This document shows positions 1 to 24,689 of a DNA stretch of 26,106 nt, piece after piece. The stretch comes from Macrostomum lignano (lineage: Eukaryota). Every line of letters begins with the position of its first letter. The stretch's first letter is position 1. Under the pieces are notes generated by a model. It was given only the letters and a program-made list of their open reading frames with translations, made no database searches and was not told the DNA's origin. Both the position numbers and the translations under genes were made by a program. The stretch is taken from positions 42,087 through 68,192 of the forward strand of contig NIVC01002465.1 in the NCBI GenBank assembly GCA_002269645.1. Reading direction: 5' to 3'.

Positions 1-27
1 CTACTACTACTACTACTACTACTACTA

Positions 28-100
<73 letters not shown>

Positions 101-114
101 TACTACTACTACTA

Positions 115-184
<70 letters not shown>
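1..184. repeat. (CTA)n/(TAG)n microsatellite with occasional TATAC interruptions; runs off the window start
   Basis: Direct reading of the sequence. Confidence 0.98.
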
Positions 185-4425: not shown

Positions 4426-4685
<260 letters not shown>

Positions 4686-4837
4686 GGCCTGAACTTTCAA
4701 CAAGCAGCTTGGACTCTATTTTTCGTTCTATCTGCTAAAGTCCATTACGGGTATGTTGCGAAGCCGTTTGCAACCCAGTCCAGTGGCAGAATGTGACCCA
4801 GCCAGTTTTGCTCTCTGCAGTTCCAGCTGCACTATAG

Positions 4838-4857
4838 CACATTCCCTGGCCCGACCG
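4838..4857 (+). CDS. Bestrophin small exon (H-I-P-W-P-D-R); 5' boundary uncertain (acceptor at 4820 with a frameshift, or at 4837)
   Basis: ATT CCC TGG CCC GAC CG|GTGAGG matches the bestrophin PWPDR motif. The phase-2 donor at 4858 joins the phase-2 acceptor at 4930 to give CGC (Arg). Confidence 0.6.
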
Positions 4858-4930
4858 GTGAGGTGAAGGGGACTTGTAGGATAAGCGAAGAGCAGTGCTC
4901 AACTCTCTAGGTCATTATCCCCCATTGCAG

Positions 4931-5097
4931 CTTCATGTCCTACATCAGCACCCTGATCCCCGGCGCCGATGAGGTCACCGTGATGCTGCGCAGGACCATC
5001 GTGCGCTACCTCCTGCTGTGCGAGGTGCTGCTGCTCATGACCGTCAGCGCGCCCATCAAGAAGCGCTTCCCGACTGTTGAGCCCCTGGTTGATGAGG
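4931..5097 (+). CDS. Bestrophin-family Ca2+-activated chloride channel, internal exon
   Basis: FMSYISTLIPGADEVTVMLRRTIVRYLLLCEVLLLMTVSAPIKKRFPTVEPLVDEG matches bestrophin G.DE..R..RRT..RY..L...L....S....KRFP...L...G. Flanked by ttgcag| and |gtgagc. Confidence 0.88.
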
Positions 5098-5100
5098 GTG

Positions 5101-5290
5101 AGCACCCCCATCCCCACCTGAGCATCCCCATCCCCACCTGAGCAACCCCCTCCCCACCTGAGCATCCCCACCTGAGCATCCCCACCTGAGCATCCCCACC
5201 TGAGCATCCCCACCTGAGCATCCCCACCTGAGCATCCCCACCTGAGCATCCCCACCTGAGCACCCCATCCCCACCTGAGCATCCCCACCC
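5101..5290. repeat. 14-bp minisatellite (CACCTGAGCATCCC), about 12 copies, starting at the splice donor
   Basis: Direct reading; 14-aa periodicity in the spurious ORFs. Confidence 0.95.
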
Positions 5291-5690
5291 CCTGTGTCTG
5301 TCACTCGCAGTGTCTGTCACTCCCTGTGTCTGTCACTCCCTGTGTCTGTCACTCGCAGTGTCTGTCACTCTCTGTGTCTGTCACTCTCTGTGTCTGTCAC
5401 TCTCTGTGTCTGTCACTCGCAGTGTCTGTCACTCGCAGTGTCTGTCACTCCCTGTGTCTGTCACTCTCTGTGTCTGTCACTCTCTGTGTCTGTCACTCGC
5501 AGTGTCTGTCACTCGCAGTGTCTGTCACTCCCTGTGTCTGTCACTCTCTGTGTCTGTCACTCTCTGTGTCTGTCACTCGCAGTGTCTGTCACTCGCAGTG
5601 TCTGTCACTCCCTGTGTCTGTCACTCTCTGTGTCTGTCACTCTCTGTGTCTGTCACTCCCTGTGTCTGTCACTTCCAGTGTCTGTTACTC
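5291..5690. repeat. 16-bp minisatellite ([GCA/CCT/TCT]GTGTCTGTCACTC), 25 units, with an 80-bp higher-order repeat
   Basis: Units counted at 16-bp spacing from 5291. Confidence 0.96.
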
Positions 5691-5760
5691 CAAGATTGTG
5701 TGTCACTCTAGCATGTGTCATTCTGGGATCTGTGTGTCACTCTAGGGTGTATCACTCTGA

Positions 5761-6125
5761 GATTTGTGTGTCACTCTGGGATTTGTGTGTCACTCTGGAA
5801 TTTGTGTGTCACTCTGGGATTTGTGTGTCACTCTGGGATTTGTGTGTCACTCTGGGATTTGTGTGTCACTCTGGGATTTGTGTGTCACTCTGGGATTTGT
5901 GTGTCACTCTGGGATTTGTGTGTCACTCTGGATTTGTGTGTCACTCTGGGATTTGTGTGTCACTCTGGGATTTGTGTGTCACTCTGGGATTTGTGTGTCA
6001 CTCTGGGATTTGTGTGTCACTCTGGGATTTGTGTGTCACTCTGGGATTTGTGTGTCACTCTGGGATTTGTGTGTCACTCTGGGATTTGTGTGTCACTCTG
6101 GGATTTGTGTGTCCCTTTGCGATTT
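5761..6125. repeat. 19-bp minisatellite (GGGATTTGTGTGTCACTCT), about 19 copies, with degenerate units upstream from about 5700
   Basis: Direct reading; 19-aa periodicity in the spurious ORFs. Confidence 0.96.
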
Positions 6126-6158
6126 GTCTGTCACACTTTTCTAACCCACCCTACGTAG

Positions 6159-6430
6159 GCCTGCGGAAGGCGAGCCGCTCAGCTGACAAGGCGGAGACGG
6201 GCCGCCACCCCTGCCAGCCCAGCAGCCCGACCGCCGCGGGCTCCGCCGAGCTGCCCCCAGCGCCGTTTCACTTTCCGAGCATCGGCCTGCAGCAGTCGCC
6301 GACGCGCCTGACGGAGGTCACCGAGGCCGGCCCCGGGCGTCCATCGTCCTACCGGCGTGGTGCTGCCGCTGCCGCTAGTGTCGACAAAGACGTCGACAAA
6401 GACTCGCCAAGTGCACCACTTGTAACCTAA
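6159..6430 (+). CDS. Probable terminal exon of the bestrophin-like gene (low-complexity Ser/Pro/Ala tail)
   Basis: ctacgtag|GC CTG CGG is phase-compatible with the phase-1 donor at 5098 (GGC, Gly). GC-rich coding-like composition up to TAA at 6428-6430; AATAAA at 6903-6908. Confidence 0.55.
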
Positions 6431-6442
6431 ATGTTTGCTCGC

Positions 6443-6495
6443 TTGATTGATTGATTGATTGATTAATTGATTATTTGGTTGGTTGGGAGATTGAC

Positions 6496-6546
<51 letters not shown>

Positions 6547-6632
6547 CTGATTGACTGATTGACTGATTGACTGATTGACTGATTCATTGATTGATTCATT
6601 GACTGATTGATTGATTGACTGATCGATCGATT
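6443..6632. repeat. (TGAT)n/(TGAC)n tetranucleotide microsatellite
   Basis: Direct reading. Confidence 0.95.
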
Positions 6633-6988
6633 AATTCGTTACTAGACTAGAGAAAACTACTGTTTGGTTCTTGTTATATAAAGTTTCGACCTTGCAAAAG
6701 TGGCTGCTAAATTCAAGTTTTCGACGCAGTATCTACCTTGTGAAATAATTTACTTTTCAACCTTGTAAAAGCACATCAGGCCATCTTGCGGCTGTCTTGC
6801 ACTTTAATCATGACTGATGCTATCGACTCTCATTTTGCAGCTTACTGACTGCAGTGAGGGGCTGCTTGAAATGTTCAATCTGTATCAGGACAATGTCGGA
6901 CCAATAAAAGAGTAAAATGAAACTGGATTCCCAGCTAAACAGCTGTTCCTGTGGTTTATTTCTGCTCTTTCTCCAAGTCCGATCACGG

Positions 6989-8121: not shown

Positions 8122-9438
8122 CGAGGGTCACTCAGAAAGTCTTTAGCCTGAGTAGGATCCACGAGACGTAGAAGCATGAAATTTGTCTATGGTGAAGACC
8201 AACTTTTAAAAGTATTGCAACAAAAATTTCAAACAGAAGCAGCCACTTTTGAGTCCACTGCAGCGAGTTAAAGTCAGTTCACCCCCCTGAGTTCTTTAAT
8301 TCAACAATGAAGCTGGAAAATCGCGACTTCAGAGCAATGATGTACTTGCACTTCAAGCAAGGCAAGTCGCCGGCCGAATCGTATCAAACTTTACAGAACG
8401 TTTTTACCCATGTATGTCCTTCATACGCAACCGTCAAAAACTGGTTCGCTGAGTTTCGCCGAGGTCAAGAAAGCCTCGAAGATGAACATCGATCCGGGAG
8501 ACCCTGTGACGCAGTGACTCCAGAAAATATCTGCGCTGTGTCCAGCATGATTGCCGCTGACCGGCGAGTGACCTACCAGCAGATCCAGCAGGAGATCGGT
8601 ATTGGATCGGGGAGTGTGCACGCCATTCTGCACGAACACCTTGGAGTGCGGAAGCTGGCTTCCCGGTGGATCCCCCATCAGCTGTCGGACGTGCAGAAGG
8701 ACACCAGGGTGGCTTGGTGCCGATTTATGCTGCAGAAATTCGAATCTGGGACCAGCCGGCGTATCTGGGACATCCTCACGGGCGATGAGACCTGGATTTA
8801 TCAATACGACCCCGAAAGCAAGCGCCAGTCAGCCATGTGGACCTTTGGAGATGAGGACAGCCCCACCAAGTTTCGACGCAGCCGGAGTGTCGGCAAGCAG
8901 ATGGTGGCCTGTTTCTTCATGCGCACTGGGCATGTGGCTTCCGTTTCACTTGAAGATCGCCAGACAGTCGCCGCTGACTGGTACACAACGGTTTGCCTGC
9001 CCAAAGTCTTTTCTGCTGTGAGCCAGAGGCGCCCAAGGTGCGGAATGCGCGGGGTGCTGCTGCACCACGACAACGCCAGCGCGCACACGGCGGCTCAAAC
9101 TCTTGAGTTTCTGGCTGACTGTGGGGTCCAGCTGATGACTCACCCTGCGTATAGTCCAGACCTGGCACCGTGCGACTTTTTTCTGTTTCCGAAGTGCAAG
9201 GAGATTCTGAAGGGCCAGGTCTTTTCTTCACCGGAAGAAGCTGTGAATGAGTTCAAAAACATCATCGAGGAGCTCCGGGATGAGGATTGGCGGCATTGCT
9301 TCGACAGCTGGTTTCACAGGATGCAAGCCTGTATCAATGCCAGTGGAGAGTATTTTGAGCACTTGCAGTCGTTTTTTAGTTCATTTGTTGCTGTTTTCGT
9401 GTTCAGGCTAAGAACCAGCGCTATTCTCAGGGTTCTCG
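8122..9438 (+). mobile_element. Mariner (D,D34D; irritans/Hsmar2-like TIR) DNA transposon with an intact left end and a damaged right end
   Basis: TA at 8120-8121 followed by CGAGGGTCACTCAGAAAGTCTTTAGCCTGA. At the right end only TCAGGCTAA (9403-9411) matches the reverse complement exactly; a degenerate match follows at 9424-9438 and there is no terminal TA. Confidence 0.9.
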
Positions 9439-9449
9439 AGGTTTTATGA
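8307..9449 (+). CDS. Mariner transposase, open frame, with a 27-aa C-terminal read-through extension
   Basis: N-terminal HTH region, RWIPHQL, TGDETWIYQY, HHDNASAH, YSPDLAPCDFFLF with exactly 34 residues between the 2nd and 3rd Asp, and GEYFE. Confidence 0.96.
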   Translation: MKLENRDFRAMMYLHFKQGKSPAESYQTLQNVFTHVCPSYATVKNWFAEFRRGQESLEDEHRSGRPCDAVTPENICAVSSMIAADRRVTYQQIQQEIGIGSGSVHAILHEHLGVRKLASRWIPHQLSDVQKDTRVAWCRFMLQKFESGTSRRIWDILTGDETWIYQYDPESKRQSAMWTFGDEDSPTKFRRSRSVGKQMVACFFMRTGHVASVSLEDRQTVAADWYTTVCLPKVFSAVSQRRPRCGMRGVLLHHDNASAHTAAQTLEFLADCGVQLMTHPAYSPDLAPCDFFLFPKCKEILKGQVFSSPEEAVNEFKNIIEELRDEDWRHCFDSWFHRMQACINASGEYFEHLQSFFSSFVAVFVFRLRTSAILRVLEVL

Positions 9450-9488
9450 GCTTGAGGTAAGAAATAGGAAGGACTGCTGGGAGCTCAC

Positions 9489-10293
9489 TGTAGCAGCGGT
9501 TGTCCCCAAAGGTGGCGCCGCCGTTGGGGCAAAGGTCGCATTTAGTCATGCCAGACTTGGTAGCCAGGGCGAAGTTCCGATCGCACTGTTGGCACTCAGT
9601 CGCCCCCGCCGCGTCAGAGAAGGAGCCCGGAGGGCAGGCCTTGCACTGCTTGCTGCCTTCTGATGAGGCGAACTGGCCGGCCGGACAGCGGGTGCAAGCC
9701 GAGGCGCCAGCAGCTGAGAAGCTTCCGGCCGGGCAGCTGGTGCAAGCTGAGGCGCCCGCTGCTGAGTAGCTTCCGGCCGGGCACGGCCTGCAGGCGGCCG
9801 CTCCAGCTGGGGAGAAGTGGCCCGGCTGGCACTTGCTGCACTCCGCTTCTCCGGCCTTGCTCGAGGTGCCGGCGGGACACTGCACGCAGGCTGGGGAGCC
9901 GCTGAAGCTGATGAAGCTGCCGGCAGGGCAGGGCGTGCAGCTCGACAAGCCGTCCGTGGCGGCCATCGAGCCCTTGGCGCACTTCTGGCAGCTCGCGGAG
10001 CCTGAGCTGGCGGCGAAGCTGCCCGGCCAGCACTTGGAGCAGGCGGCGGCCCCGGCGCGGCTGTATGAGCCTGGCGGGCACTTCTGGCACTTGGAATTCA
10101 CGGTTATTCCCCTATGGGTGCCGGCGCTGCAGGGCTGGCAAATGAAGTCCGAGTCTTCACTTAGCTGGTGACCGGCCTGGCACAGTATGTGGTCCATCCG
10201 CTTGCCTCTCTCCTGCCTGCTTCTCGGCAACATTGGCCGATAACCCCGTCAGAGCGGCCACAGAGCCGCAGCAACTAGCAGAGAAAAGTTCAT
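9489..10293 (-). CDS. First exon of a secreted Cys-rich protein with tandem GCC2/GCC3 (ephrin-receptor-like) repeats; N-terminus disrupted
   Basis: About 12 C..CP.G.(F/Y)S...G...C units. ATG at 10293 begins a signal-peptide-like MNFSLLVAAAL but meets an in-frame TGA at 10251-10249. A donor TAC A|GTGAGC lies at 9488; the ORF tail to 9427 is probably intronic. Confidence 0.8.
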
Positions 10294-13673: not shown

Positions 13674-14204
13674 ATGCGGCTAATGAGGCACCTGCTCAGG
13701 TGCCGGCACAGTTTCCGGCTGCGCCACCCCATCATCATGTCAGTGCTGCTGCTGCTCATGTTTATCATGTGGCCGGCCTCTCAGCTGCTCTCAGGTGACG
13801 GCTTTCCCTACAAAGAGTTCGCAGCCAGGTGGAACGCCTCGCCTCATTGCACCGGGCGAGATCAGGAACTGCCGGTCCGTAGGATCCACCTGATGTACCA
13901 GACTGACTCTGTGCCAGTCGCATTCGCCAACTACATCCGCTCCTGGGCCCGCGACTACCCGAACTTCGAGCTGCACTTCTGGACTGACGCGGGCATTGAC
14001 AGCTTCCTGATGGCTCAGTTCGGGCCCCGGATGCGCCGCTTCTTTCACGAACAGCTGGCGCACGGGGTGGAGCGCTCAGACCTGGCCAGGCTGCTCATTC
14101 TCAACCATTTCGGAGGCCTGTATGCCGACCTTGATGTCATGTCACTCAGGCCTGCACAGTCCATAATGGCCCAGCATGACATTGTCTTCACTGAGGAGCC
14201 TCGG
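13674..14204 (+). CDS. GT32-family (DXD, Gly_transf_sug) glycosyltransferase, exon 1; type II membrane anchor
   Basis: Basic N-terminus plus hydrophobic IIMSVLLLLMFIMW. RRIHLMYQT...SW...YPNFELHFWTD...ERSDLARLLILNHFGGLYADLDVMSLRP. Phase-0 donor CGG|GTGAGC at 14205. Confidence 0.9.
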
Positions 14205-14229
14205 GTGAGCTGTGGCTGACTGTTGGTTA

Positions 14230-14725
14230 CTGTATGACAGTTCACTGACACAGTCAGCCATTCTGTATGACAGTTCACTCATTCTGTATGACAGTTCACT
14301 GACACAGTCAGCCATTCTGTATGACAGTTCACTGACACAGTCAGCCATTCTGTATGACAGTTCACTGACACAGCCGGCCATTCTGTATGACAGTTCACTG
14401 ACACAGTCAGCCATTCTGTATGACAGTTCACTGACACAGCCAGCCATTCTGTATGACAGTTCACTGACACAGTCAGCCATTCTGTATGACAGTTCACTGA
14501 CACAGCCGGCCATTCTGTATGACAGTTCACTGACACAGTCAGCCATTCTGTATGACAGTTCACTGACACAGCCGGCCATTCTGTATGACAGTTCACTGAC
14601 ACAGCCGGCCATTCTGTATGACAGTTCACTGACACAGCCAGTCCGTTCTGAATGACAGATCACTGACACAGCCGGCTGTTCTGTAGGACAGATCACTGAC
14701 ACAGCCAGTCCATTCTGTATGACAG
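14230..14725. repeat. 33-bp intronic minisatellite (CTGTATGACAGTTCACTGACACAGTCAGCCATT), about 15 copies
   Basis: Direct reading; 11-aa periodicity in the spurious ORFs. Confidence 0.96.
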
Positions 14726-14743
14726 ATGGGTAATCCAGCCACT

Positions 14744-15590
14744 CAGTCAGTGAGTCAGGTGACACAGTCAGTGTGTCAGGTGACCCAGTCAGTGAATCAG
14801 GTGACCCAGTCAGTGTGTCAGGTGACAGTCAGTGAATCAGGTGATCCAGCCAGTCTCAGTCAGTGAGTCAGGTGACCCAGTCAGTGTGTCAGGTGACCCA
14901 GTCAGTGAATCAGGTGACCCAGTCAGTGTGTCAGGTGACCCAGTCAGTGAATCAGGTGACCCAGTCAGTGAGTCAGGTGACCCAGTCAGTGAGTCAGGTG
15001 ACCCAGTCAGTGAGTCAGGTGACCCAGTCAGTGAGTCAGGTGACCCAGTCAGTGAGTCAGGTGACCCAGTCAGTGAGTCAGGTGACCCAGTCAGTGAGTC
15101 AGGTGACCCAGTCAGTGAGTCAGGTGACCCAGTCAGTGAGTCAGGTGACCCAGTCAGTGAGTCAGGTGACCCAGTCAGTGAGTCAGGTGACCCAGTCAGT
15201 GAGTCAGGTGACCCAGTCAGTGAGTCAGGTGACCCAGTCAGTGAGTCAGGTGACCCAGTCAGTGAGTCAGGTGACCAGTCAGTGAGTCAGGTGACCCAGT
15301 CAGTGAGTCAGGTGACCCAGTCAGTGAGTCAGGTGACCCAGTCAGTGAGTCAGGTGACCCAGTCAGTGAGTCAGGTGACCCAGTCAGTGAGTCAGGTGAC
15401 CCAGTCAGTGAGTCAGGTGACCCAGTCAGTGAGTCAGGTGACCCAGTCAGTGAATCAGGTGACCCAGTCAGTGAGTCAGGTGACCCAGTCAGTGAGTCAG
15501 GTGACCCAGTCAGTGAGTCAGGTGACCCAGTCGGTGAGTCAGGTGACCCAGTCGGTGAGTCAGGTGACCCAGTCGGTGAGTCAGGTGACC
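14744..15590. repeat. 21-bp intronic minisatellite (CAGTCAGTGAGTCAGGTGACC), about 40 copies
   Basis: Direct reading; 7-aa periodicity in the spurious ORFs. Confidence 0.97.
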
Positions 15591-15604
15591 CGCGCCACCC
15601 GCAG

Positions 15605-16155: not shown

Positions 16156-16613
16156 GTGGGTAGATGATTGGAAACCTACTCACAGGTGGGTAGATGATTG
16201 GAAACCTACTCACAGGTGGGTAGATGATTGGAAACCTACTCACAGGTGGGTAGATGATTGGAAACCTACTCACAGGTGGGTAGATGATTGGAAACCTACT
16301 TACATGACTCGTACAGGTGGGTTGATGATTGGAAACCTACTCACAGGTGGGAAGATGATTGGAAACCTACTCACAGGTGGATAGATGATTGGAAACCTAC
16401 TCACAGGTGGGTAGATGATTGGAAACCTACTCACAGGTGGGTAGATGATTGGAAACCTACTCACAGGTGGGTAGATGATTGGAAACATACTCACAGGTGG
16501 GTAGATGATTGGAAACCTACTCACAGGTGGGTAGATGATTAGAAACCTACTCACAGGTGGGTAGATGATTGGAAACCTACTCACAGGTGGGTAGATGATT
16601 AGAAACCTACTCA
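16156..16613. repeat. 30-bp minisatellite (ACAGGTGGGTAGATGATTGGAAACCTACTC), 15 copies with one internal interruption near 16300
   Basis: Direct reading; 10-aa periodicity in the spurious ORFs. Confidence 0.96.
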
Positions 16614-17774
16614 ACGCTAAGCTTTGTTCATAAGTTTACCTTCAGTTTTCTACATCTAATGTTGCTTGGACATGTAGTTGGATGAATTCTGCAAACTTTT
16701 GTCTCCGTTGCATTTATGTATTTAGTCTTCCCAGTTATAAACTGCTTTAGTACTCGTAAGTCTGATAGATCTTTCGCTCCATTCAGCTCTGCACTGATAT
16801 TGCTTGTACTGCTCACTGACAAATATACGAAGACGTATGCACAAATCTTGTCCCACTTGTTTCAGCTTAAACCTGCGCACTTCAGTTCTAAGTTGAATTG
16901 AAAGAAAGATTTGCTTTGTAAATTTGACAGTTTGTTTCTTAGTAAATTTACTACTTTCTTTGCTTAATAAACATGAAATAAACTCTGTTTCTCGCACCAG
17001 GATATTCTTGCAAGAAGTAGGTAAAATTTTACAGATAGAATTGATTGCGATTTTTTAGTGGGAGACAAAGGGGCTGTGTGCACCCTGGTGCACTTAAAGC
17101 GACATTGTCACACAACCGGCGAGAGGCATTGCTGCCCATTCCGCCGACTCCCCTGAGCAGGCATACAAGCGCGCAGATACGTACGCAGTCATATGCACGG
17201 ACACAGGATTTCACAGCGGCCCCAACTTTATTTATCGTTAGACATGTTACATTTCACTGTGCCCTGGGGGTTTCCCTCCCCCAAAGCCGTTATAATTTTG
17301 CATCAGCAGACGGCTCGAAATTAATGCGACTGCGCCAGACCACTTGACATTACGGCCTCCTTCAGGGTTGCGGTTTTGCTGTATACCCGCTTTTGTCCAT
17401 TTTATTTCGATTGTCTGCCGCTTGTACGAGACTCAAAGTCTGTGCGCTCTCACTTGCTTGCGGGCTTGTTAAATTAAAAGTACGAACGTACATTAACGAG
17501 CCAACAGTAGACTAGCGTACGCTCCAGGCCTCTGTAAGCTTCGTATCTTCATATCGCAGCCTGTCAAAGGCGGTTGTTTTGTGCACTTGCGCGCTGCTGC
17601 GCTCGTACGGGCGGTGAGAAGAGCAGCAGTAAATCCGTGAGAATGTTAGTGCCTTATTTTTAGCGTAATTAAGATTAGATAACAGGTCAGCAGTGCTGCA
17701 TTCAAGAGCTCTCCAAAAAATCAAAGAGAAGAAATTTTTACTTGTAGAGCTGCTTACGTGTTTGGGATTCAGCA

Positions 17775-18280
17775 ATGTCCCTTCCACCGAGTCTCGCAGA
17801 TCTGGAGTATTACCGCGCCTACCGGCCGGAAGATGGGGAAATTGACTTGGCCTCCTACCTGCTGGACGAGGACAACCTGGCCGAGAAGATCACGTCCGGG
17901 TTTTACCCAACTCCCACGGTGCTGGCCCACCTGCAGCGCACTCTGGGCGAGGAGCCCAAAGACCCAGACGCCACGGATGTCGGCCCGTTCCCATCGCGTC
18001 GGCTCAAGTCGGACATCTTCGACGCGGCCAAGTTCGCCGAGAAGGACGAATTCGTGAAGTCGCTGCGGCCGGAGCCGCTCGAGTCTGACGCGGAATTCGC
18101 CGTGCGGCTGTTCGAGCGGAGCCGCTGCGGCCTGGACTCGGTGAGGGCGGCCTTCTGCTTCGTCTGCTGCCTGCCGGTGGACGAGCTGGCCAAGGCGGAG
18201 GTTGAGTCTGAGTTCTACACCCGGGTCAGGCGGATGCGGCAAACCGACGACAGTTATGAGATTTTCAATTGGTTGATCGG
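17775..18280 (+). CDS. KY/Hillarin-plastin fusion gene, coding exon 1 (N-terminus and first half of the transglutaminase-like domain)
   Basis: ATG at 17775, 2 nt after the acceptor ttcag|. FDAAKFAEKDEF...DSVRAAFCFV...YEIFNWLI resembles the Hillarin/KY region before and within the TG core. Phase-2 donor GG|GTAAGT at 18281. Confidence 0.82.
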
Positions 18281-18696
18281 GTAAGTAGTTACGAGCATAA
18301 AAATAAGAACTTACGCTGACTTACATGTACTGGCTTTATTGATTGTCAAAATTTTATTTAAAAACTCCGCCCCTTTGGCTATATGTCGAAACCTATTCAG
18401 AGGTATTTACATTACTCAGAACTTACTCAGAAGTGTTGTCAGTTTAGTGCAAAAGAATTGACACGTTCTATAAATGCTAATCGTGAGTCTTACTGTGACA
18501 TTAGGACTTGAGTAAAAGTCAGTACCTTTTGGAAATTCAAACTAGTACATGTATTTGTGGCAAAAGAAAGTTTTTGGGATAAATAAGACAATAAGCTTTC
18601 AGCTGGTCTGTTAACGAAGCAAACATACCTGAAAGCAATAACTCGATGTGATATCAAACTGCATGTGTACATACTAAAGCTACCTGAAAACTGCAG

Positions 18697-21225
18697 GCTG
18701 ACCGATGTGCCATCCAAAAAGATATTCGGCTACAAGAAGGGCGCGGCCTACGAGAGCGGCATGGAGGCCCGGAGGTCTGGCGGCAACTGGACTGCCTGCT
18801 ACGTCGAGGGCGAGTGGCGTCTCATCGATCCGCTGTGGGGCGCGGAGATCCTCACCGAATTCGACACCGGCAACTATTCCAAACTGGACGACCAGGGCAA
18901 CGTGGAGGACTCGAGGAAGTCGGAGGGACGGCTGATTTACGGTTGCAACGAGTTCTACTTCCTCACCGATCCGGAGAACCTCATTCTCACGCACTTCCCC
19001 GTGGAGGAACTGCGCCAGTGGCAGCTGCTGGACAGGCCCCTCACCCTGGCCGAGTTTCATCGAATGCCGAAGTTCTTTTCAGCGGCCCTGGACGAGATGT
19101 TCCACTACAGCATAAACCCAAGTAGCCACCCGCTGAATGTCATTCTGGGCAAGCCAGGTACCGTCAAGGTTTACCTAAGGGAGGCTGCTGGCCAGATGTA
19201 CGACTACAAAGCCGTTGTTAGCATCCACAAATCCAACATCACAGATGGGACCCGGGCGGAGATCAAACAGCAAGCCAGCATCAACGGCTACCTGTCCAAA
19301 ACAACCAGAATGAGCCACGACACTGTGCGCTTCAAGTTTGTTCCACCGTGCAGCGGGAAATTCATGTTATCAATCAATCTCCTAAGAGCTATCGAGTATC
19401 CTGACAAGATTTTGCAAATAGGAATTGAATACGTCTCTTACGTAATTCACTGCCCCCGTGCTGACCGGACCGCCAAGATGGTGCCCGTGGGCTGCGCGAA
19501 TCTGATGCACTTTGGCGCGGGAGCGCAGCTCGCCTCTGCTCGACTAAAGACGGACGAGCCCGGCGAGATCAAGGTGGAGGACGGCGAGCGACTGATACAG
19601 TTGGAGTCCACAGATCAGCGACCGCACCGGCTGGAGTGCCAGCTGTACGGAGCTGCTGACGAGAGCATATCGCCAAAGAACCTGCTGTCTTGGACAGTCG
19701 GTCCGAAGACCAGCATCCAGTTTCTGTCGCCAGACTCGGGGTCATTCGCCTTGGTCGTCCGCGACAGAGGCATCCCAGTCTGTCAGTTTCTGCTTGACTC
19801 TGCGTCTGAATTTCGCGATTGTCGCGACTTTCCCTTGCCGGACCTGGACAGCCTGGGCGGACTGGACGTTGCTGACGATGCCGTGCAAGAACTCGTGCGG
19901 CCGCTGAGCCATCCCGATCCGTACATTCTTTGCAATGACCCCAGCCTTCAGCTCAAGTTTGCTTCAAGAGCTCGCCTGGAAATCAGGGCTGAGCTGTCTT
20001 ACATTTGCTCGAACGGGGAGAGCGAAGAGCTCAGCGGCTACACTTTCATCTCCAGGGACAGCGACGGCTTCATCGTGGACGTGCGGTTCAAGATCGCTGG
20101 TCACTACGTTCTGCAACTATTTTACCGACAGAGCAGCTCAAGCCCGTGGCAGCGCTACATGAACTACTTCATCCGGTGCGTGGGCCAGCTGGACGGTCGA
20201 GCTGAGCAGTTCCCGGAGCCCCTGCCCGCGTGGAGCAGCGACAATCTACTGTTGCATCCGACGCAGAAGCTGCTGCCTCTGAACAAGCCGGTGTCGGTGA
20301 GTGTCCGAATCGGCGATCCGGACTTCAAAGTGGCCTACTTGCTGAACGAGGGCAAGAACGAGCGCACCGTGATGCAGCGGGACGATGTCAACATCTGGCA
20401 GGGCACCATCGAGGGACTCGAAGACTCGGCAGGCTCGTCTGTTAAGCTGCTCGGCGGTCCCAGTGAGAACATGTGCGCCGAGCTGCTAAGCTACAAGTTC
20501 GAATCGGAGAAGGATCAAACTATTCGAAACAAGGAAATTCGATCGGCGGCTAAGCTCAACCTGAGTCGCCTGGGTAATGAAAGACTGCGCAAGCGAAAGC
20601 AGGAGAACCACGAAAGAAAAGAGATGGCGCTGGACCCGCTGCCGGATGCGCCTCGGCCTGAGGAATTGGCCGATTTGCAGCTGGAAAACGAATTAGAAAA
20701 ACTGCTGCTGGAAGATGAGCCGCCACTGGGAGAGGCGCAACCGGAAGCACCAGAAGACGAGCCGGCACTGGGAGAGGCGCAACCGGAAGCACCAGAAAAC
20801 GAGCCGGCACTGGGAGAGGCGCAACCGGAAGCACCAGAAGACGAGCCGGCACTGGGAGAGGCACAACCGGAAGCACCAGAAGACGAGCCGGCACTGGGAG
20901 AGGCACAACCGGAAGCACCAGAAGACGAGCCGGCACTGGGAGAGGCACAACCGGAAGCACCAGAAGACGAGCCGGCACTGGATGCTGTCCGATTCGAAAC
21001 GTTAGAAGATGAACCTCCTACTATGGAAACGAAGAACGAGACTTCAGAGTCGAATGATGAACCTGGAGCAGAGGTTTCAGACCAACCAGCTGCTGGAGAG
21101 AAGGCAGCAGTGGCTGATTGGCTTAACAAAAACCTGAGGTCGGATCCTGACTGTGAGAAGTACCTGCCTATTGAGGACATCCTTGCGGAAATCGAAGGGA
21201 AATTTGACGATGGCATTTTACTATG
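18697..21225 (+). CDS. Fusion gene exon 2: TG-like core, KY-type Ig-like repeats, acidic repeat spacer and start of plastin CH1
   Basis: ctgcag|G, phase 2. IFGYKKGAAY...WTACYVEGEWRLIDPLWGA...EFYFLTDPENLILTHFP...WQLLDRPLTLAEF is KY/Hillarin-like. The exon ends EKAAVADWLNKNLRSDPDCEKYLP...DDGILL, matching plastin EKYAFVNWINKAL..DPDC...P...DGIVLC. Donor TG|GTAAAT at 21226. Confidence 0.88.
20711..20980 (+). repeat. Coding 42-bp tandem repeat (EDEPALGEAQPEAP) x6 plus a partial copy
   Basis: Direct reading; in frame within exon 2. Confidence 0.95.
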
Positions 21226-21395
21226 GTAAATCAAACCGTTACATGCAATTTGTTACACTTGTGATACAAGTAGCAGAGCAATCCTCGAAGGTTTCCTGGA
21301 TTCATTCCAAGAAAACTTAGAGCCTTTGTTTGCAGCTTGCAGTCTAAACCATTGCAACTGACAGAACACTTCACTTCTTTATCTGTCCATTGCAG

Positions 21396-21870
21396 CAGCG
21401 CGGTCAATGCTGTCTCGCAGGACACAATCGACAAGCGAGCGTTGCACAGAGACGCAGGCATGAATCGGTCGCACCAGATTGAGAACATTACCCTGGCGCT
21501 GAACTCGGCTCAAAGCCTCGGAGTTCCCGTTAGCTCCGAGGCGGCTGAATTGGCGCAGAGTCCGAAGCTGCTGCTCGATCTCCTGTGGCAGCTGATCTGG
21601 TTCGGCCTGACTGACGCTGTCAAGCAGGCAGCTGCCGCAGACTCGCAGAAGCTCAAAGCCATGCTCCCAGAGACAGAACAGGACGCAGACATCCGAGGCA
21701 TTGCACCTGAGCAAATGCTCATGCGATGGGTGAACTACCATCTGCGTAATGCGGGCAGTGAACGTTCGATTGAAAACTTCAGTGAGGATGTGAGAGACAG
21801 CGAGGCTTACGCGCTTCTGCTGCAGCAGATCTGCCCGCCTGATATCAGGGACTGCTTGAATCCTGCTGCG
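21396..21870 (+). CDS. Fusion gene exon 3: plastin/fimbrin CH1-CH2 (ABD1)
   Basis: ttgcag|C completes TGC (GILLC). SAVNAVSQDTIDKRAL...ENITLALNSAQSLG...LLWQLIWFGL...PEQMLMRWVNYHLRNAG...NFSEDVRDSEAY. Phase-0 donor GTGAGT at 21871. Confidence 0.92.
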
Positions 21871-22236
21871 GTGAGTCACCTCGGTTCTGATCGCAATAAG
21901 TATTAGCTTATCGCACACATTCGAACCGACAAGACAGAATCCTACTCGTACCCCTGCTTCCTAAATTTTGCACTTTAGAAAGTAGCCGTTTATTTTTTGA
22001 GTCACTTTTCACTTTCGAGCGTTGCCTTCTGGCAGTATTCTCATCCCGTTCATAAAACTAAACCTGACCTAAACTAAACACAATCTAAACTAAACCTCTA
22101 AACCTTTTGGCTGGTGTGGCTAAATCCAATGCTGCACTGCCTGAGGACAAAGAAGTCAGCGCATACATCCTTGGGAGTGAGCAGGAACTTGCCCTAGTGC
22201 ATCAAAATTAATCTTGAAAATGTCGCAAACTTGCAG

Positions 22237-23025
22237 GGAATTGTCGCTCAAAGTGACTTCCTTCTGAGAGCGCAGCTGGTTCTGCAGAACGCGGATCTCA
22301 TTGAAGCTCGCGAATTTATTCAGCCGGAGGACATTGTCAGCGGAAATTCCAACCTGAACGTCATGTTCGTGGCCAACCTGTTCAAAAGGTGGCCCTGCCT
22401 GCCCGAGCTGCCGGATGGCGGCCAGGCCGGGGCTGAGCAGGCCGCTGAAAAGCCGCCAGAGCTGGTTCGCGAGGAGAGAACCTACGCGAACTGGATGAAT
22501 TCGGCCGGGGTGCAGCCCAGGATCAACTGCCTGTACACGGACGCGAGCTCCGGGCTGCCGTACCTGCAGCTGCTGGACCAGATCCGGCCGGGCCTGGTCC
22601 AGTGGTCGCGCGTGAGCCAGACACTTCGTGGGGCCCGAGCCTACTTTCAGCGGCTGGAGAACTGCGACTACGCCGTGGAGCTGGGCAGGCAGCTGGGCTT
22701 CAGCTTGGTGGGCATCCGAGGCAAGAGTCTCCTGGACGGTGACGAGATGCCGACTCTTGCGCTGCTGCGGCAGCTGATGCTCTCGCACAACCCGGCCGCA
22801 GTCTCCAGGGGGGACAGTCGAGTCGAGAATTCCAAGCGGCTGGTTGACGAGAACACGATTGTCGAGTGGACGAACGAGCAGCTGCAGCGCGGTGGCAAGA
22901 AGTCGCGGTTGCGCTCGTTTCTGGACGCCAGCCTGGGCAACTGCCACTGCCTGCTGGACCTCATCGACTGCCTGAGGCCCGGCTACGTCGACTACAGCTT
23001 GGTGCTGCCGGGGGCCACCGAGGCG
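22237..23025 (+). CDS. Fusion gene exon 4: plastin/fimbrin end of CH2, CH3 and start of CH4
   Basis: ttgcag|GGA. RAQLVLQNA...DIVSGNSNLNVMFVANLF...REERTYANWMNSAGV...LENCDYAVELGRQLGFSLVGI...TLALLRQLM...IVEWTNEQL...LLDLIDCLRPG. Phase-0 donor GTGAGT at 23026. Confidence 0.93.
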
Positions 23026-23385
23026 GTGAGTTTGAGAATCACGAACTTCCCAGCATTTGTCAGCAAGCCGTCGATCAGACAGGCAATAAAGCTTCAAATT
23101 TGGACTCGAACAACAAGCTTGAGGCTAAAGAACTGCTGGAATTTTGTGGCTCTTAAAGAGAGTTGCTGAGATGTATGGGGGTCGCCGAAATGCTGTTGCT
23201 CATGGGGAGAATCGTTGAGATTTCAAGGTCAAGACTCATGGGGGTTGCTGAGATGCTTCGATCCAAAACTCAGAGGATGCTGATATTTCAGGCTAGATGT
23301 CAGAATTTCAGGGCGGGTGCTTTTTGCTTTAAACACATTATTTTCCTTCAAAAAGTAAAAAAGAAGAACCTGCGAGCGACACGTA

Positions 23386-23420
23386 GTTTAGGTTTAGGTT
23401 TAGGTTTAAGTTTAGGTTTA
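23386..23420. repeat. Short (TTTAGG)n tract within intron 4, probably part of a non-autonomous element
   Basis: GTTTAGGTTTAGGTTTAGGTTTAAGTTTAGGTTTA. Confidence 0.8.
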
Positions 23421-23591
23421 TGTCCCAACAGGGGGCGACAATTGCTATTTTAACGTCGAAAACACTAAACACTCAATACCGTTCTGAAATAAATATGGGT
23501 CTCCCATAACAAATTCGAGGGTATTCATACTGCATGTGCCCTGACGCTCCCAATGACCTAGCTGAGCCAACCAACCTCGAATAAAACGCAG

Positions 23592-23741
23592 GAGCGGCTG
23601 CAGAACGCCCGCCTGGCTGTCAGTCTAAGCTGGCGAGCCGGTGCCAAGGTGTTCGCCTCCCCGGTGGACATTGCGCAGGCCCGGCCCCGGATGCTCATCG
23701 CTGCTTTCGCCGCGCTCATGCAGCTCAGCTCCCGCGGATAG
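23592..23741 (+). CDS. Fusion gene exon 5: plastin CH4 C-terminus and stop
   Basis: aacgcag|GAG gives ERLQNARLAVSLSWRAGAKVFASPVDIAQARPRMLIAAFAALMQLSSRG*, matching plastin [48 protein letters not shown] at 23900 and 23954. Not listed in the ORF track. Confidence 0.9.
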   Translation, partial: ERLQNARLAVSLSWRAGAKVFASPVDIAQARPRMLIAAFAALMQLSSRG

Positions 23742-24126
23742 ACTGGAACTGATCTCAGTTGATTTGGAAGAGTTTAAATTGAAACAAAAATCAGGTCAGC
23801 TTTATTTAACTTCAACATTTTCATCTATGATTAACCACTACTCCAGCTCTTTAAAAAGTGTGCTCTAACTGTGTATTTATTTATTGAAACCTTCGTTTGA
23901 ATAAATATATTCCAGAAAAAGTTTAACTCTGTGTATCCTGAAGCATCATGGCTAATAAAACAATAATTGACCACCTACAGAACTAAATAAAGCTTCATAT
24001 AAACCTACTGATTTAAACAAATAGCTACAAAACAATATTCTCAAGTGTGCATGAAAATTTTCGATCCCCAGTACTCTCTCATCTCTTCAATCTCTGGCTG
24101 ACTTGTCGAATTCAGCCTTGCAGACT

Positions 24127-24554
24127 TCAGACTTCCAGCATCATGCTGATGGAGCGAACCGCAGTGTAGTTATTCTCGACGCATTTCCAGTAGGCGTACT
24201 TAGGGCTGTAGACGTCTCCGCTGGGCGCGTACCAGCCGTTCGGGTTGCACGTGAGGCAGTAGTTGAACCAGAAGCCCGCATTTCCGTATGCGACTGCGCA
24301 GAAGTCTGCCTGCGCAGCGTCATTGTCCTGGTCCTTGGTGGAGAACTTCATTCCATTGTGCACCGCCAGGCAGTCGCTCGCCAAGTTTGACTGGTTGGGC
24401 AGAAACGCGGCATAGTTCATCTGGTACTTTGTTGTCGAATTGCCCACCGTGAAGCTGCTGTACTCGTTGAAGTACTCGGAGTTGTTGTACAGCAGAAAAC
24501 GGATCCGGAGGGTTCTCGGCGTGGAGGCTGTGAGCTCGTGAATGCGCTGGAGGC
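24127..24554 (-). CDS. Fibrinogen-related domain (FReD/ficolin-like) protein, terminal exon
   Basis: atcag|GC CTC gives GLQRIHELT...LRI...EYSSFTVG...KYQM...HNGMKFSTKDQDND...CA...GFWFNYC..CNPNG.Y...W...SMML. Confidence 0.92.
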
Positions 24555-24689
24555 CTGATTGACACGGGTACGACTGAATGTCAAATTTTTGGTACGGAAA
24601 GTTGATACGGAATGGGTGAGCCTTCGGCAATGACATTTAGGATATAAAAGTCAAGGGTCTTTATCACAATATACTAAATATCTAAGGTC

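What the first reader, a model, noticed from the sequence alone, without database searches (positions are those of the whole stretch)
17775..23741. KY/Hillarin transglutaminase-like module fused in frame to a complete plastin/fimbrin actin-bundling core
Seen in sequence: five exons (17775-18280, 18697-21225, 21396-21870, 22237-23025, 23592-23741) have canonical GT-AG sites, compatible phases (2,2,0,0) and total 4449 nt, i.e. 1482 aa plus stop. The switch from the KY/Hillarin part to plastin CH1 (EKAAVADWLNKNLRSDPDC, from about 21098) lies inside one stop-free exon, so it is not an artefact of joining exons. Established: plastins are normally two EF-hands plus four CH domains. KY (Z-disc, binds filamin C), Hillarin (septin and cleavage-furrow associated), LTD-1 and fungal Cyk3 are cytoskeletal scaffolds carrying TG-like domains. 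Inference: this chimera would target an actin bundler through a KY/Hillarin scaffold instead of regulating it by Ca2+, for example in muscle attachment or cytokinesis. I know of no described protein with this architecture, but I could not search.
Basis: partly seen in the sequence, partly recalled or inferred. Interest (0 to 1): 0.9.

Follow-up and report, generated by a model that had tools for sequence, protein, structure and literature searches.

The report
Flatworm KY-like scaffold fused to plastin
The window holds a real, already annotated but unstudied gene of the flatworm Macrostomum lignano, in which a catalytically dead transglutaminase-like/Ig-domain scaffold is joined in one reading frame to an actin-bundling plastin core that has lost its calcium sensor; it is an interesting lineage-specific domain fusion, not a new kind of system.

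Summary
The five-exon model gives 1482 aa with one terminal stop. It is identical, residue for residue, to GenBank PAA57614.1 (BOX15_Mlig003158g1, "hypothetical protein", Macrostomum lignano). That annotation was built from RNA-seq transcript assemblies that are cut at mapped trans-splice and poly(A) sites. A second genomic copy has the same exon structure. dN/dS between the copies is 0.20 overall, 0.11 in the plastin core and 0.10 in the linker, and the only indel is four whole 14-aa repeat units.

Pfam finds four CH domains and a KY-type Ig-like domain, but no EF-hand and no Transglut_core. The transglutaminase-like fold is supported only through homologues and a structure model. Its catalytic Cys and His are absent.

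The plastin half is sister to the worm's own canonical plastin (200/200 bootstraps) and shares three intron positions and phases with it. The KY half's nearest relatives are M. lignano paralogues without CH domains. None of 149 KY relatives or 120 plastin relatives from other organisms has the fusion.

Verdict: a genuine, selected, lineage-specific fusion. It is most likely a Ca2+-insensitive actin cross-linker tethered to a non-catalytic scaffold. It is already catalogued but not described in the literature searched. Function is untested, and 19% of plastin-invariant residues are changed. Interest is moderate.

The parts
17560..17613 (+). Probable 5' UTR exon, followed by a UTR intron at 17614-17747
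   Evidence: The UniProt ML2-assembly model P0001 translates this stretch as its first 18 residues and splices to 17748. GTGAGA...TTGTAG borders are visible. The evidence is weak because it comes from a gene model only.
17775..18280 (+). Exon 1: start codon, N-terminal helices and the first half of the transglutaminase-like domain (aa 1-169)
   Evidence: ATG at 17775 and donor gtaagt. Identical to PAA57614.1. The second copy has the same exon.
18697..21225 (+). Exon 2 (2529 nt, 842 codons). A single open exon carrying the rest of the TG-like domain, four Ig-like domains, the linker and the start of CH1
   Evidence: zero stops in the coding frame, against 9 and 16 in the other two frames over 20250-21225.
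18027..19090 (+). Transglutaminase-like (papain-like fold) pseudo-enzyme domain, aa ~85-300, interrupted by intron 1. Catalytic Cys and His are absent, Asp is retained (WRLIDP)
   Evidence: Alignment with relatives that match Pfam Transglut_core. The AF2 model has pLDDT 87.7. In the fold search the best hit is FAP246 at E 9e-7, followed by weak hits to TGases, TglA, TgpA, TG2 and arylamine N-acetyltransferases. There is no direct Pfam hit.
19118..20518 (+). Four Ig-like beta-sandwich domains of KY type, aa ~310-776
   Evidence: AF2 model with pLDDT 87 and pTM 0.80; strand blocks at 317-421, 459-537, 569-663 and 686-771. Pfam Ig-like_KY matches aa 572-665 (E 7e-15) and gives a sub-threshold hit on the first Ig domain (E 0.0018). 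Fold matches are to Ig arrays and FAP246.
20519..20656 (+). Basic motif (aa 777-822, ...RLRKRKQENHERKEMALDPLP) shared with the closest KY-like paralogue. This is the end of the KY-derived part
   Evidence: phmmer E 3e-4 to 5e-4, and a BLASTP alignment to the P0276/P0128 tail.
20657..21097 (+). Acidic, Pro-rich linker (aa 823-969; aa 871-985 has net charge -31). It contains the 42-bp tandem repeat at 20711-20981 (14-aa unit EDEPALGEAQPEAP; 7 units here, 3 in the second copy). The fusion junction lies here
   Evidence: TRF: period 42, 6.5 copies, 97% matches. The copy-number difference is exactly 56 aa. No similarity to the plastin EF-hand region.
21098..21225 (+). Start of plastin CH1 (aa 970-1011) at the 3' end of exon 2
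   Evidence: Homology to canonical plastins starts at EKAAVADWLNKN. The donor is at the same position and phase as the intron of the canonical M. lignano plastin gene after aa 160.
21396..21870 (+). Exon 3: rest of CH1 and CH2 (ABD1)
   Evidence: tblastn with P0005 aa 164-319, 50% identity. Intron position and phase are shared with the canonical gene at aa 319/320.
22237..23025 (+). Exon 4: CH3 and most of CH4 (ABD2)
   Evidence: tblastn with P0005 aa 321-607, 50% identity. The canonical gene has one extra intron near aa 479/480 that is absent here.
23592..23741 (+). Exon 5: end of CH4 and the stop codon
   Evidence: tblastn with P0005 aa 604-649, 59% identity. The acceptor is at the same position and phase as in the canonical gene. 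The older UniProt models miss this exon.
23900..23905 (+). First AATAAA after the stop codon (candidate poly(A) signal)
   Evidence: Pattern match only.

Best explanation
This is a genuine, expressed, protein-coding gene of Macrostomum lignano (BOX15_Mlig003158g1). It arose in the macrostomid lineage when a duplicated KY-like gene (a transglutaminase-like pseudo-enzyme domain plus four Ig-like domains) became joined in frame to a DNA-level duplicate of the worm's plastin gene. The break lies inside the plastin exon that encodes the EF-hands. As a result, the Ca2+-sensing headpiece and its linker helix were replaced by an acidic, repeat-containing, probably disordered spacer. The product most likely works as an actin-filament cross-linker or bundler: two CH-CH actin-binding domains that cannot be switched by their own EF-hands. 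The N-terminal non-catalytic TG-like/Ig module would hold it at a particular cytoskeletal site through protein-protein contacts, and the roughly 150-residue acidic spacer would act as a flexible tether. Shown here: the gene structure, its identity to a transcript-derived annotation, the domain content, loss of the EF-hands, loss of the catalytic Cys and His, the origin of both halves, and purifying selection on every part. Inferred: actin binding and bundling, Ca2+ independence of the whole protein, the targeting role of the KY module, and where the protein acts.
For: The model is exact and equals PAA57614.1. GenBank models of this assembly derive from StringTie/TACO RNA-seq assemblies, cut by TBONE at mapped trans-splice and poly(A) sites, with TransDecoder ORFs (PMC5730564). 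Older independent UniProt models of another assembly also join KY and CH. A second copy on NIVC01001450.1 has the same five exons and splice sites. dN/dS between copies is 0.20 overall (p 7e-15), 0.11 in the plastin core (p 8e-7), 0.17 in the Ig region, and 1 nonsynonymous against 7 synonymous changes across the exon-2 tail that spans the junction (p 2e-4). Exons carry no frame-breaking indels, whereas the introns carry indels and are down to 79% identical. There are four CH domains (E 2e-61), with full-length alignment to plastin-3 (7r94, E 1e-101) and to fimbrin cores (1rt8, 1pxy). No EF-hand appears in the protein or anywhere in the window. The plastin half is sister to canonical M. lignano plastin in 200/200 bootstraps and shares three of three intron positions and phases with it. 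The KY half's nearest relatives are M. lignano paralogues without CH domains. The confident AF2 model shows a TG-like domain plus four Ig-like domains, and its best structural match is FAP246, a structural protein of the ciliary central apparatus.
Against: I could not inspect any long-read or RT-PCR evidence across the junction; the transcript support is short-read assembly taken from the literature. The gene was found in only one species, so there is no deep conservation of the fusion. The databases seem to lack other Macrostomum species, so this is absence of data and not evidence of absence. The plastin core sits on a branch about twice as long as the canonical one. It has changed 18 of 96 residues that are invariant in 18 canonical plastins, most of them in CH3, so canonical bundling cannot be assumed. 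Pfam does not recognise the TG-like domain directly. The linker dN/dS rests on four substitutions. There are no expression or localisation data for this gene.
Confidence: 0.7

Rival explanations
1. The fusion protein is real, but the plastin-derived half has been neofunctionalised. It no longer bundles actin in the canonical way. For example, it might bind single filaments through one ABD only, or use its CH domains for another partner.
For: 18 of 96 plastin-invariant residues are replaced (for example W1348R, Y1354H, R1254A, G1066Q, G1073D), with seven of them in CH3. Canonical plastins keep 93-100% in the same leave-one-out test. The branch is about twice as long as that of the canonical paralogue. 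Identity to other animal plastins is 38-43%, against 48-57% for the canonical copy.
Against: All four CH domains are recognised with strong scores and align end to end with solved plastin/fimbrin cores. 81% of invariant positions are retained. Present-day purifying selection is strong (dN/dS 0.11). None of this separates bundling from other CH functions.
Confidence: 0.2
2. The single gene model is an annotation artefact. Under this view there are two adjacent genes, or a polycistronic precursor of the kind common in M. lignano, and the plastin part is expressed on its own after internal trans-splicing or from an internal promoter.
For: About 7% of M. lignano transcriptional units are polycistronic precursors and 39% of genes are trans-spliced. 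The models come from short-read assembly. An AG acceptor-like gtttcag exists at 21074-21080.
Against: No stop codon ends the KY part anywhere in the 842-codon exon. After 21080 the next in-frame Met is aa 1034, inside CH1. TBONE, which cuts at mapped SL and poly(A) sites, left the model whole at two loci. The junction region is kept in frame and shows 1 nonsynonymous against 7 synonymous changes between the copies. The repeat-number change is a whole multiple of 42 bp.
Confidence: 0.07
3. It is a young chimeric gene without function, on its way to becoming a pseudogene.
For: It is restricted to one species in the databases searched. A third, truncated and frameshifted copy of the 5' part exists elsewhere in the genome.
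Against: Two full-length copies are intact over 4.3-4.4 kb of CDS, with dN/dS of 0.20 (p 7e-15). Both halves have diverged far from their parents (37-38% and 52% identity) without acquiring stops, which implies long persistence under constraint.
Confidence: 0.03

Closest known systems
Plastin/fimbrin family (PLS1-3, Sac6/Fim1; solved: plastin-3 7r94, fimbrin cores 1rt8 and 1pxy)
   Same: Four tandem CH domains forming ABD1 and ABD2, aligned end to end (E 1e-101 to plastin-3). It nests within flatworm plastins as sister to canonical M. lignano plastin. Three intron positions and phases are shared with that gene.
   Different: It has no EF-hand pair and no EF-CH1 linker helix. Instead it has a 969-aa N-terminal extension. 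19% of plastin-invariant residues are changed and the branch is long.
KY (kyphoscoliosis peptidase)/Hillarin-type proteins: transglutaminase-like domain followed by KY-type Ig-like domains (Pfam PF01841 + PF23265)
   Same: The order is the same: a TG-like domain and then several Ig-like_KY domains. There is significant sequence homology to molluscan and other invertebrate KY-like proteins that do match both Pfam families. The conserved motifs W..WRL.DP and NEFYFLTDPE...WQLL are present.
   Different: Transglut_core is not detected directly. The catalytic Cys and His are missing. The C-terminus is fused to a plastin core, which none of the 149 relatives examined has. The known roles of KY (binding filamin C at the Z-disc) and of Hillarin are recalled from the literature and were not tested here.
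FAP246, a Chlamydomonas ciliary central-apparatus C1 protein (PDB 7n6g chain 6E, 7sqc)
   Same: It is the best structural match both to the whole KY half (E 3e-14, 637 columns) and to the TG-like domain alone (E 9e-7, TMq 0.60). A weak sequence match covers the W..WRLVDP motif. This shows that such a module can serve as a structural component of a cytoskeletal assembly.
   Different: FAP246 is a microtubule-associated ciliary protein of a green alga. Sequence identity is 12-18%. The match does not include any CH domains.
Filamins (CH-CH actin-binding domain plus a long array of Ig-like repeats)
   Same: CH-type actin-binding domains and an array of Ig-like domains are combined in one polypeptide. 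Filamin and titin Ig arrays appear among the fold matches of the Ig region.
   Different: This is an analogy only. The domain order is reversed, there are two ABDs instead of one, the Ig domains are of KY type, and there is no sequence homology to filamin outside the generic CH and Ig folds.

Membership tests
Plastin/fimbrin | Four tandem CH domains (two actin-binding domains) in one chain | tested here: met
   Pfam CH, four stretches, E 2e-61. 95-99% coverage against plastins. Aligns to residues 125-624 of plastin-3 7r94.
Plastin/fimbrin | N-terminal pair of EF-hands (Ca2+-regulatory headpiece) plus the linker helix before CH1 | tested here: not met
   No EF-hand family at E<=0.1, whereas canonical M. 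lignano plastin P0005 has them. tblastn of P0005 finds nothing for aa 1-98 in the window. The alignment shows homology beginning at CH1 helix 1.
Plastin/fimbrin | Descent from the plastin gene lineage | tested here: met
   NJ tree: sister to M. lignano plastin in 200/200 bootstraps, inside monophyletic flatworm plastins in 199/200. Three shared intron positions and phases.
Plastin/fimbrin | Bundles F-actin | not testable with these tools
   Needs co-sedimentation or electron microscopy. 81% of invariant residues are kept and 19% are changed.
KY/Hillarin-type TG-like proteins | KY-type Ig-like domain(s) (PF23265) | tested here: met
   E 7e-15, 55.7 bits against a cut-off of 27. The AF2 model shows four Ig-like sandwiches.
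KY/Hillarin-type TG-like proteins | Transglutaminase-like core domain (PF01841 / papain-like fold) | tested here: inconclusive
   No Pfam hit, even at E<=10. However, the region is homologous to relatives that pass PF01841. UniProt labels sister models as TGc. The fold search gives FAP246 at E 9e-7, then TGase-fold proteins only at E 0.01-1.
KY/Hillarin-type TG-like proteins | Cys-His-Asp catalytic triad (needed for any peptidase or transglutaminase activity) | tested here: not met
   The alignment shows no Cys at the position four residues before the A/Y of the A-x-L-F helix motif, and G-N in place of His before the conserved Trp. Only Asp (WRLIDP) is kept. Most of the closest relatives also lack Cys and His. 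I located the triad columns from my own knowledge of the PF01841 motif.

The most novel reading that the evidence does not exclude
A functional KY-plastin protein would be a previously undescribed type of actin cross-linker. It would be a plastin core freed from Ca2+ control and positioned by a pseudo-transglutaminase/Ig scaffold through a variable-length acidic tether. It would have been invented in macrostomid flatworms alongside an expansion of KY-like paralogues, perhaps for a lineage-specific actin-rich structure.
Probability: 0.5. Interest if true: 0.5.

Novelty: new variant of a known kind. Interest (0 to 1): 0.4.

Why it matters
If the protein bundles actin, it is a natural experiment on plastin regulation. 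It is a complete ABD1-ABD2 core without the EF-hand headpiece, kept under selection. That could show how bundling is controlled or targeted when Ca2+ switching is removed. It would also give the poorly understood KY/Hillarin-type module a readable output, because whatever the module binds would recruit an actin bundler. M. lignano has transgenesis, RNAi and in situ methods, so localisation and loss of function are directly testable. As it stands, the gene is a single-species, lineage-specific domain fusion of two well-known modules and is already in public annotation, so the general significance is moderate.

Tried and rejected
1. The full-length word-indexed search returned only four hits.
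3. The third word-indexed search, with the KY half alone, found only M. lignano models and no orthologues from other species. The databases appear to lack other Macrostomum species, because no close orthologue of the canonical plastin appears either. The age of the fusion within the genus therefore could not be determined.
4. I looked for CH or plastin regions in 149 KY-half relatives and 11 extra M. lignano paralogue entries. There were none (best E 0.22-0.26).
5. I looked for KY similarity in the long (870-928 aa) neodermatan plastins. There was none at E<=10.
6. I looked for EF-hand remnants in the linker and for EF-hand exons in the window. There were none.
7. Pfam Transglut_core on the isolated N-terminal domain gave no hit at E<=10.
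8. The PDB sequence search with the KY half gave only a marginal FAP246 hit (E 0.61).
9. Literature searches gave nothing relevant: Macrostomum+plastin, the gene ids, kyphoscoliosis peptidase+calponin homology+fusion, and Macrostomum+kyphoscoliosis. The gene ids are also absent from the supplements of PMC5816591.
10. A search for terminal inverted repeats around the mariner-like insertion found nothing convincing.
11. I considered and rejected bacterial or viral origin, and assembly chimerism. The locus is duplicated with its flanks on a second contig.


Full report
**Source and observation.**
- The window is the last 26,106 bases of contig NIVC01002465.1 of the Macrostomum lignano Mlig_3_7 assembly (free-living flatworm, Macrostomorpha).
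They give a 4449-nt CDS encoding 1482 aa with one terminal stop.
- This translation is identical, residue for residue, to GenBank PAA57614.1 (BOX15_Mlig003158g1, "hypothetical protein"; UniRef A0A267E9N5).
- The first CH1 helix (EKAAVADW) starts at 21098 inside the 2529-nt exon 2. Over 20250-21225 the coding frame has no stop, while the other two forward frames have 9 and 16.

**Transcript support.**
- According to PMC5730564, the GenBank annotation of this assembly is the "coregenes" subset of a genome-guided transcriptome built from RNA-seq with StringTie and TACO plus a de novo assembly.
- The TBONE pipeline cuts the transcriptional units at experimentally mapped spliced-leader trans-splice sites and poly(A) sites. 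ORFs are then called by TransDecoder.
- The single uncut KY-plastin model is therefore transcript-derived. It was obtained at two loci (Mlig003158.g1 and Mlig024785.g1).
- Older, independent models from the ML2 assembly (UniProt A0A1I8HW62, A0A1I8III7, A0A1I8H0G3) also join the two halves. They miss the true last exon and so truncate CH4.
- I could not inspect reads or long-read data.

**Second copy and selection.**
- A second copy on NIVC01001450.1 (locus L001) is 94-98% identical at the DNA level, including the flanks. It has the same five exons and splice sites and encodes 1426 aa.
- Nei-Gojobori dN/dS between the copies:

| Region | dN/dS | Counts or p |
|---|---|---|
| Whole CDS | 0.20 | 38.5 nonsynonymous vs 58.5 synonymous; one-sided binomial p 7e-15 |
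| TG-like part | 0.36 | p 5e-3 |
| Ig region | 0.17 | p 4e-7 |
| Linker | 0.10 | only four substitutions |
| Plastin core | 0.11 | p 8e-7 |
| Exon-2 tail spanning the junction (aa 800-1011) | 0.04 | 1 nonsynonymous vs 7 synonymous; p 2e-4 |

- The only indel in the CDS is 56 aa, exactly four units of the 14-aa repeat.
- The introns carry indels and are down to 79% identical, whereas the exons are 96.8-99.3% identical.
- A third partial copy covering aa 1-327 on NIVC01002974.1 is frameshifted.

**Anatomy.**
- Pfam finds four CH stretches (E 2e-61) and one Ig-like_KY domain (aa 572-665, E 7e-15). It finds no EF-hand and no Transglut_core.
- An AlphaFold2 model of aa 1-776, built on 35 relatives, is confident (pLDDT 87, pTM 0.80). 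It shows an alpha+beta N-terminal domain followed by four beta-sandwich domains.
- Its best PDB match is FAP246 of the Chlamydomonas central-pair C1 projection (E 3e-14). Generic Ig arrays follow.
- The N-terminal domain modelled alone (pLDDT 87.7) again matches FAP246 (E 9e-7, TMq 0.60). It then matches transglutaminase-fold proteins weakly, at E 0.01-1: a TGase 4xz7, 3isr, TglA, TgpA, TG2 and arylamine N-acetyltransferases.
- Relatives from molluscs do pass Pfam Transglut_core, and they align with the fusion across the conserved W..WRL.DP and NEFYFLTDPE..WQLL motifs.
- In that alignment the fusion has no Cys at the nucleophile position and has Gly-Asn where the His should precede the conserved Trp. 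Only the Asp remains. I located the triad columns from my knowledge of the PF01841 motif. The module is therefore best read as a non-catalytic scaffold.
- After the fourth Ig domain comes a basic motif (RKRKQENHERKEMALDPLP) that the closest paralogue shares.
- Next comes an acidic, Pro-rich stretch (aa 871-985, net charge -31) containing the 42-bp/14-aa tandem repeat EDEPALGEAQPEAP, with seven units here and three in the other copy.
- The plastin core begins at aa 970.

**Origin of the two halves.**
- The plastin half's best hit is M. lignano's own canonical plastin (P0005, 684 aa, with EF-hands) at 51-52% identity. All other animal plastins are at 38-43%.
- In an NJ tree the fusion groups with P0005 in 200/200 bootstraps, inside monophyletic flatworm plastins (199/200), on a branch about twice as long.
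- The three introns of the plastin half lie at the same positions and phases as introns of the canonical gene: after aa 160 (phase 2), 319 (phase 0) and 603 (phase 0). The canonical gene has one more near aa 479/480 and others upstream.
- The plastin half therefore came from a DNA-level duplication, not a retrocopy. The breakpoint lies inside the exon that, in the parent, encodes the EF-hands and the start of CH1.
- The KY half's nearest relatives are at least five M. lignano paralogue clusters at 33-38% identity. Molluscan KY-like proteins follow at 27-29%.
- None of 149 relatives from the exhaustive search, nor the extra paralogues, contains a plastin or CH region.
- None of the 120 listed plastin relatives carries PF23265.
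- In the databases available, the architecture exists only in M. lignano. These databases seem to lack other Macrostomum species, so the age of the fusion within the genus is unknown.

**Likely mechanism.**
- *Shown:* a complete ABD1-ABD2 core without its own Ca2+ sensor is fused through a long acidic spacer to a non-catalytic TG-like/Ig module, and all parts are under purifying selection.
- *From established knowledge of plastins:* the CH1-CH4 core is the actin-binding and bundling unit, and the EF-hand headpiece confers Ca2+ sensitivity.
- *Inferred:* the protein cross-links actin filaments independently of Ca2+. Its site of action is set by what the KY-like module binds. FAP246 shows that such a module can be a building block of a cytoskeletal assembly.
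- *Caveat:* the core has changed 18 of 96 residues that are invariant in 18 canonical plastins, seven of them in CH3. Canonical plastins keep 93-100% in the same test. Altered or lost bundling is therefore a serious rival.

**Rivals.**
- Artefactual merging of two genes, or separate expression of the plastin part, is unlikely for four reasons. The KY part has no stop codon. There is no in-frame Met between the gtttcag at 21074-21080 and the middle of CH1. TBONE left the model whole. The junction is conserved in frame.
- Decay toward a pseudogene is contradicted by the selection data.

**Novelty and score.**
- The gene is already in GenBank and UniProt with auto-assigned domains, so it is catalogued. 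It is called "hypothetical protein", and no paper was found that describes the gene or this architecture.
- It is a new variant of known kinds: a plastin with a different N-terminal module, or equally a KY-like protein with an actin-bundling output. It is lineage-specific.
The fusion is real and testable in a tractable model, but domain shuffling of two well-known cytoskeletal modules in one species is not categorically new.

**Surroundings.**
- Upstream of the gene the window is rich in repeats and transposons:
  - a reverse-transcriptase/RNase H ORF;
  - a mariner-like transposase that is absent from the second copy's locus;
  - several minisatellites;
  - unannotated ORFs with Ephrin_rec_like and glycosyltransferase domains.
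- Downstream, on the opposite strand, there is a fibrinogen C-domain exon.

Noticed in passing
window 1886-4321 (+): An 811-aa ORF with reverse transcriptase (E 1e-26) and RNase H (E 4e-11) domains. It is a retroelement copy.
   Followed up: no
window 8122-9413 (ORF 8307-9449, +): An ORF for a mariner/Mos1-like transposase (HTH_48, DDE_3). The roughly 1.29-kb segment is absent from the otherwise collinear second locus L001, so it is an insertion specific to this copy. No clear terminal inverted repeats were found.
   Followed up: partly
window 9427-10233 (-): A 268-aa ORF full of Ephrin_rec_like / NCD3G / TNFR-like Cys-rich repeats (E 4e-36). It is not in the GenBank annotation of the contig.
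   Followed up: no
window 13674-14219 (+): An ORF with a DXD-type glycosyltransferase sugar-binding region (Gly_transf_sug, E 5e-15). It is unannotated and may be a gene fragment.
   Followed up: no
window 24127-24636 (-): An ORF encoding a fibrinogen C-terminal globular domain (E 9e-24), about 400 bp downstream of the fusion gene on the opposite strand. It is probably an exon of a fibrinogen-related gene cut off by the contig end.
   Followed up: no
window 1-184, 4426-6636, 14259-15591, 16156-16613: Dense micro- and minisatellite arrays: (CTA)n, (CTGT)n, and 16/80-bp, 19-bp, 33-bp, 21-bp x35 and 30-bp x15 units. Several differ in copy number between the two homologous loci.
   Followed up: no
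L004 9943-11381 (NIVC01002974.1): A third, partial copy of the gene's 5' part (aa 1-327, 72-96% identity). Its frame changes between segments, and it is annotated in GenBank as a 283-aa protein (PAA54075.1). It is probably a pseudogene fragment.
   Followed up: partly
window 23064-23153, and the repeat region 20711-20981: The UniProt ML2-assembly models (A0A1I8HW62, A0A1I8III7) use a stretch inside intron 4 as their last exon. They therefore lack the end of CH4. One of them also has a frameshift-like segment (ERRNRKHQKH) inside the acidic repeat. The GenBank model is the better one.
   Followed up: yes
proteins P0056, P0061, P0068, P0080, P0084, P0100 (parasitic flatworm plastins): Neodermatan plastins are 870-928 aa long, show no Pfam EF-hand hits and carry roughly 280-330-aa C-terminal extensions after the CH core. 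The extensions are unrelated to the KY module.
   Followed up: partly
M. lignano paralogues P0128/P0276, P0130/P0278, P0131/P0282, P0133/P0283, P0137: M. lignano carries an expanded set of divergent KY-like (TG-like + Ig) paralogues. Most of them fall below Pfam thresholds. The closest one ends in a roughly 180-aa Ala/Glu/Lys-rich tail where the fusion has its acidic repeat and plastin core.
   Followed up: partly
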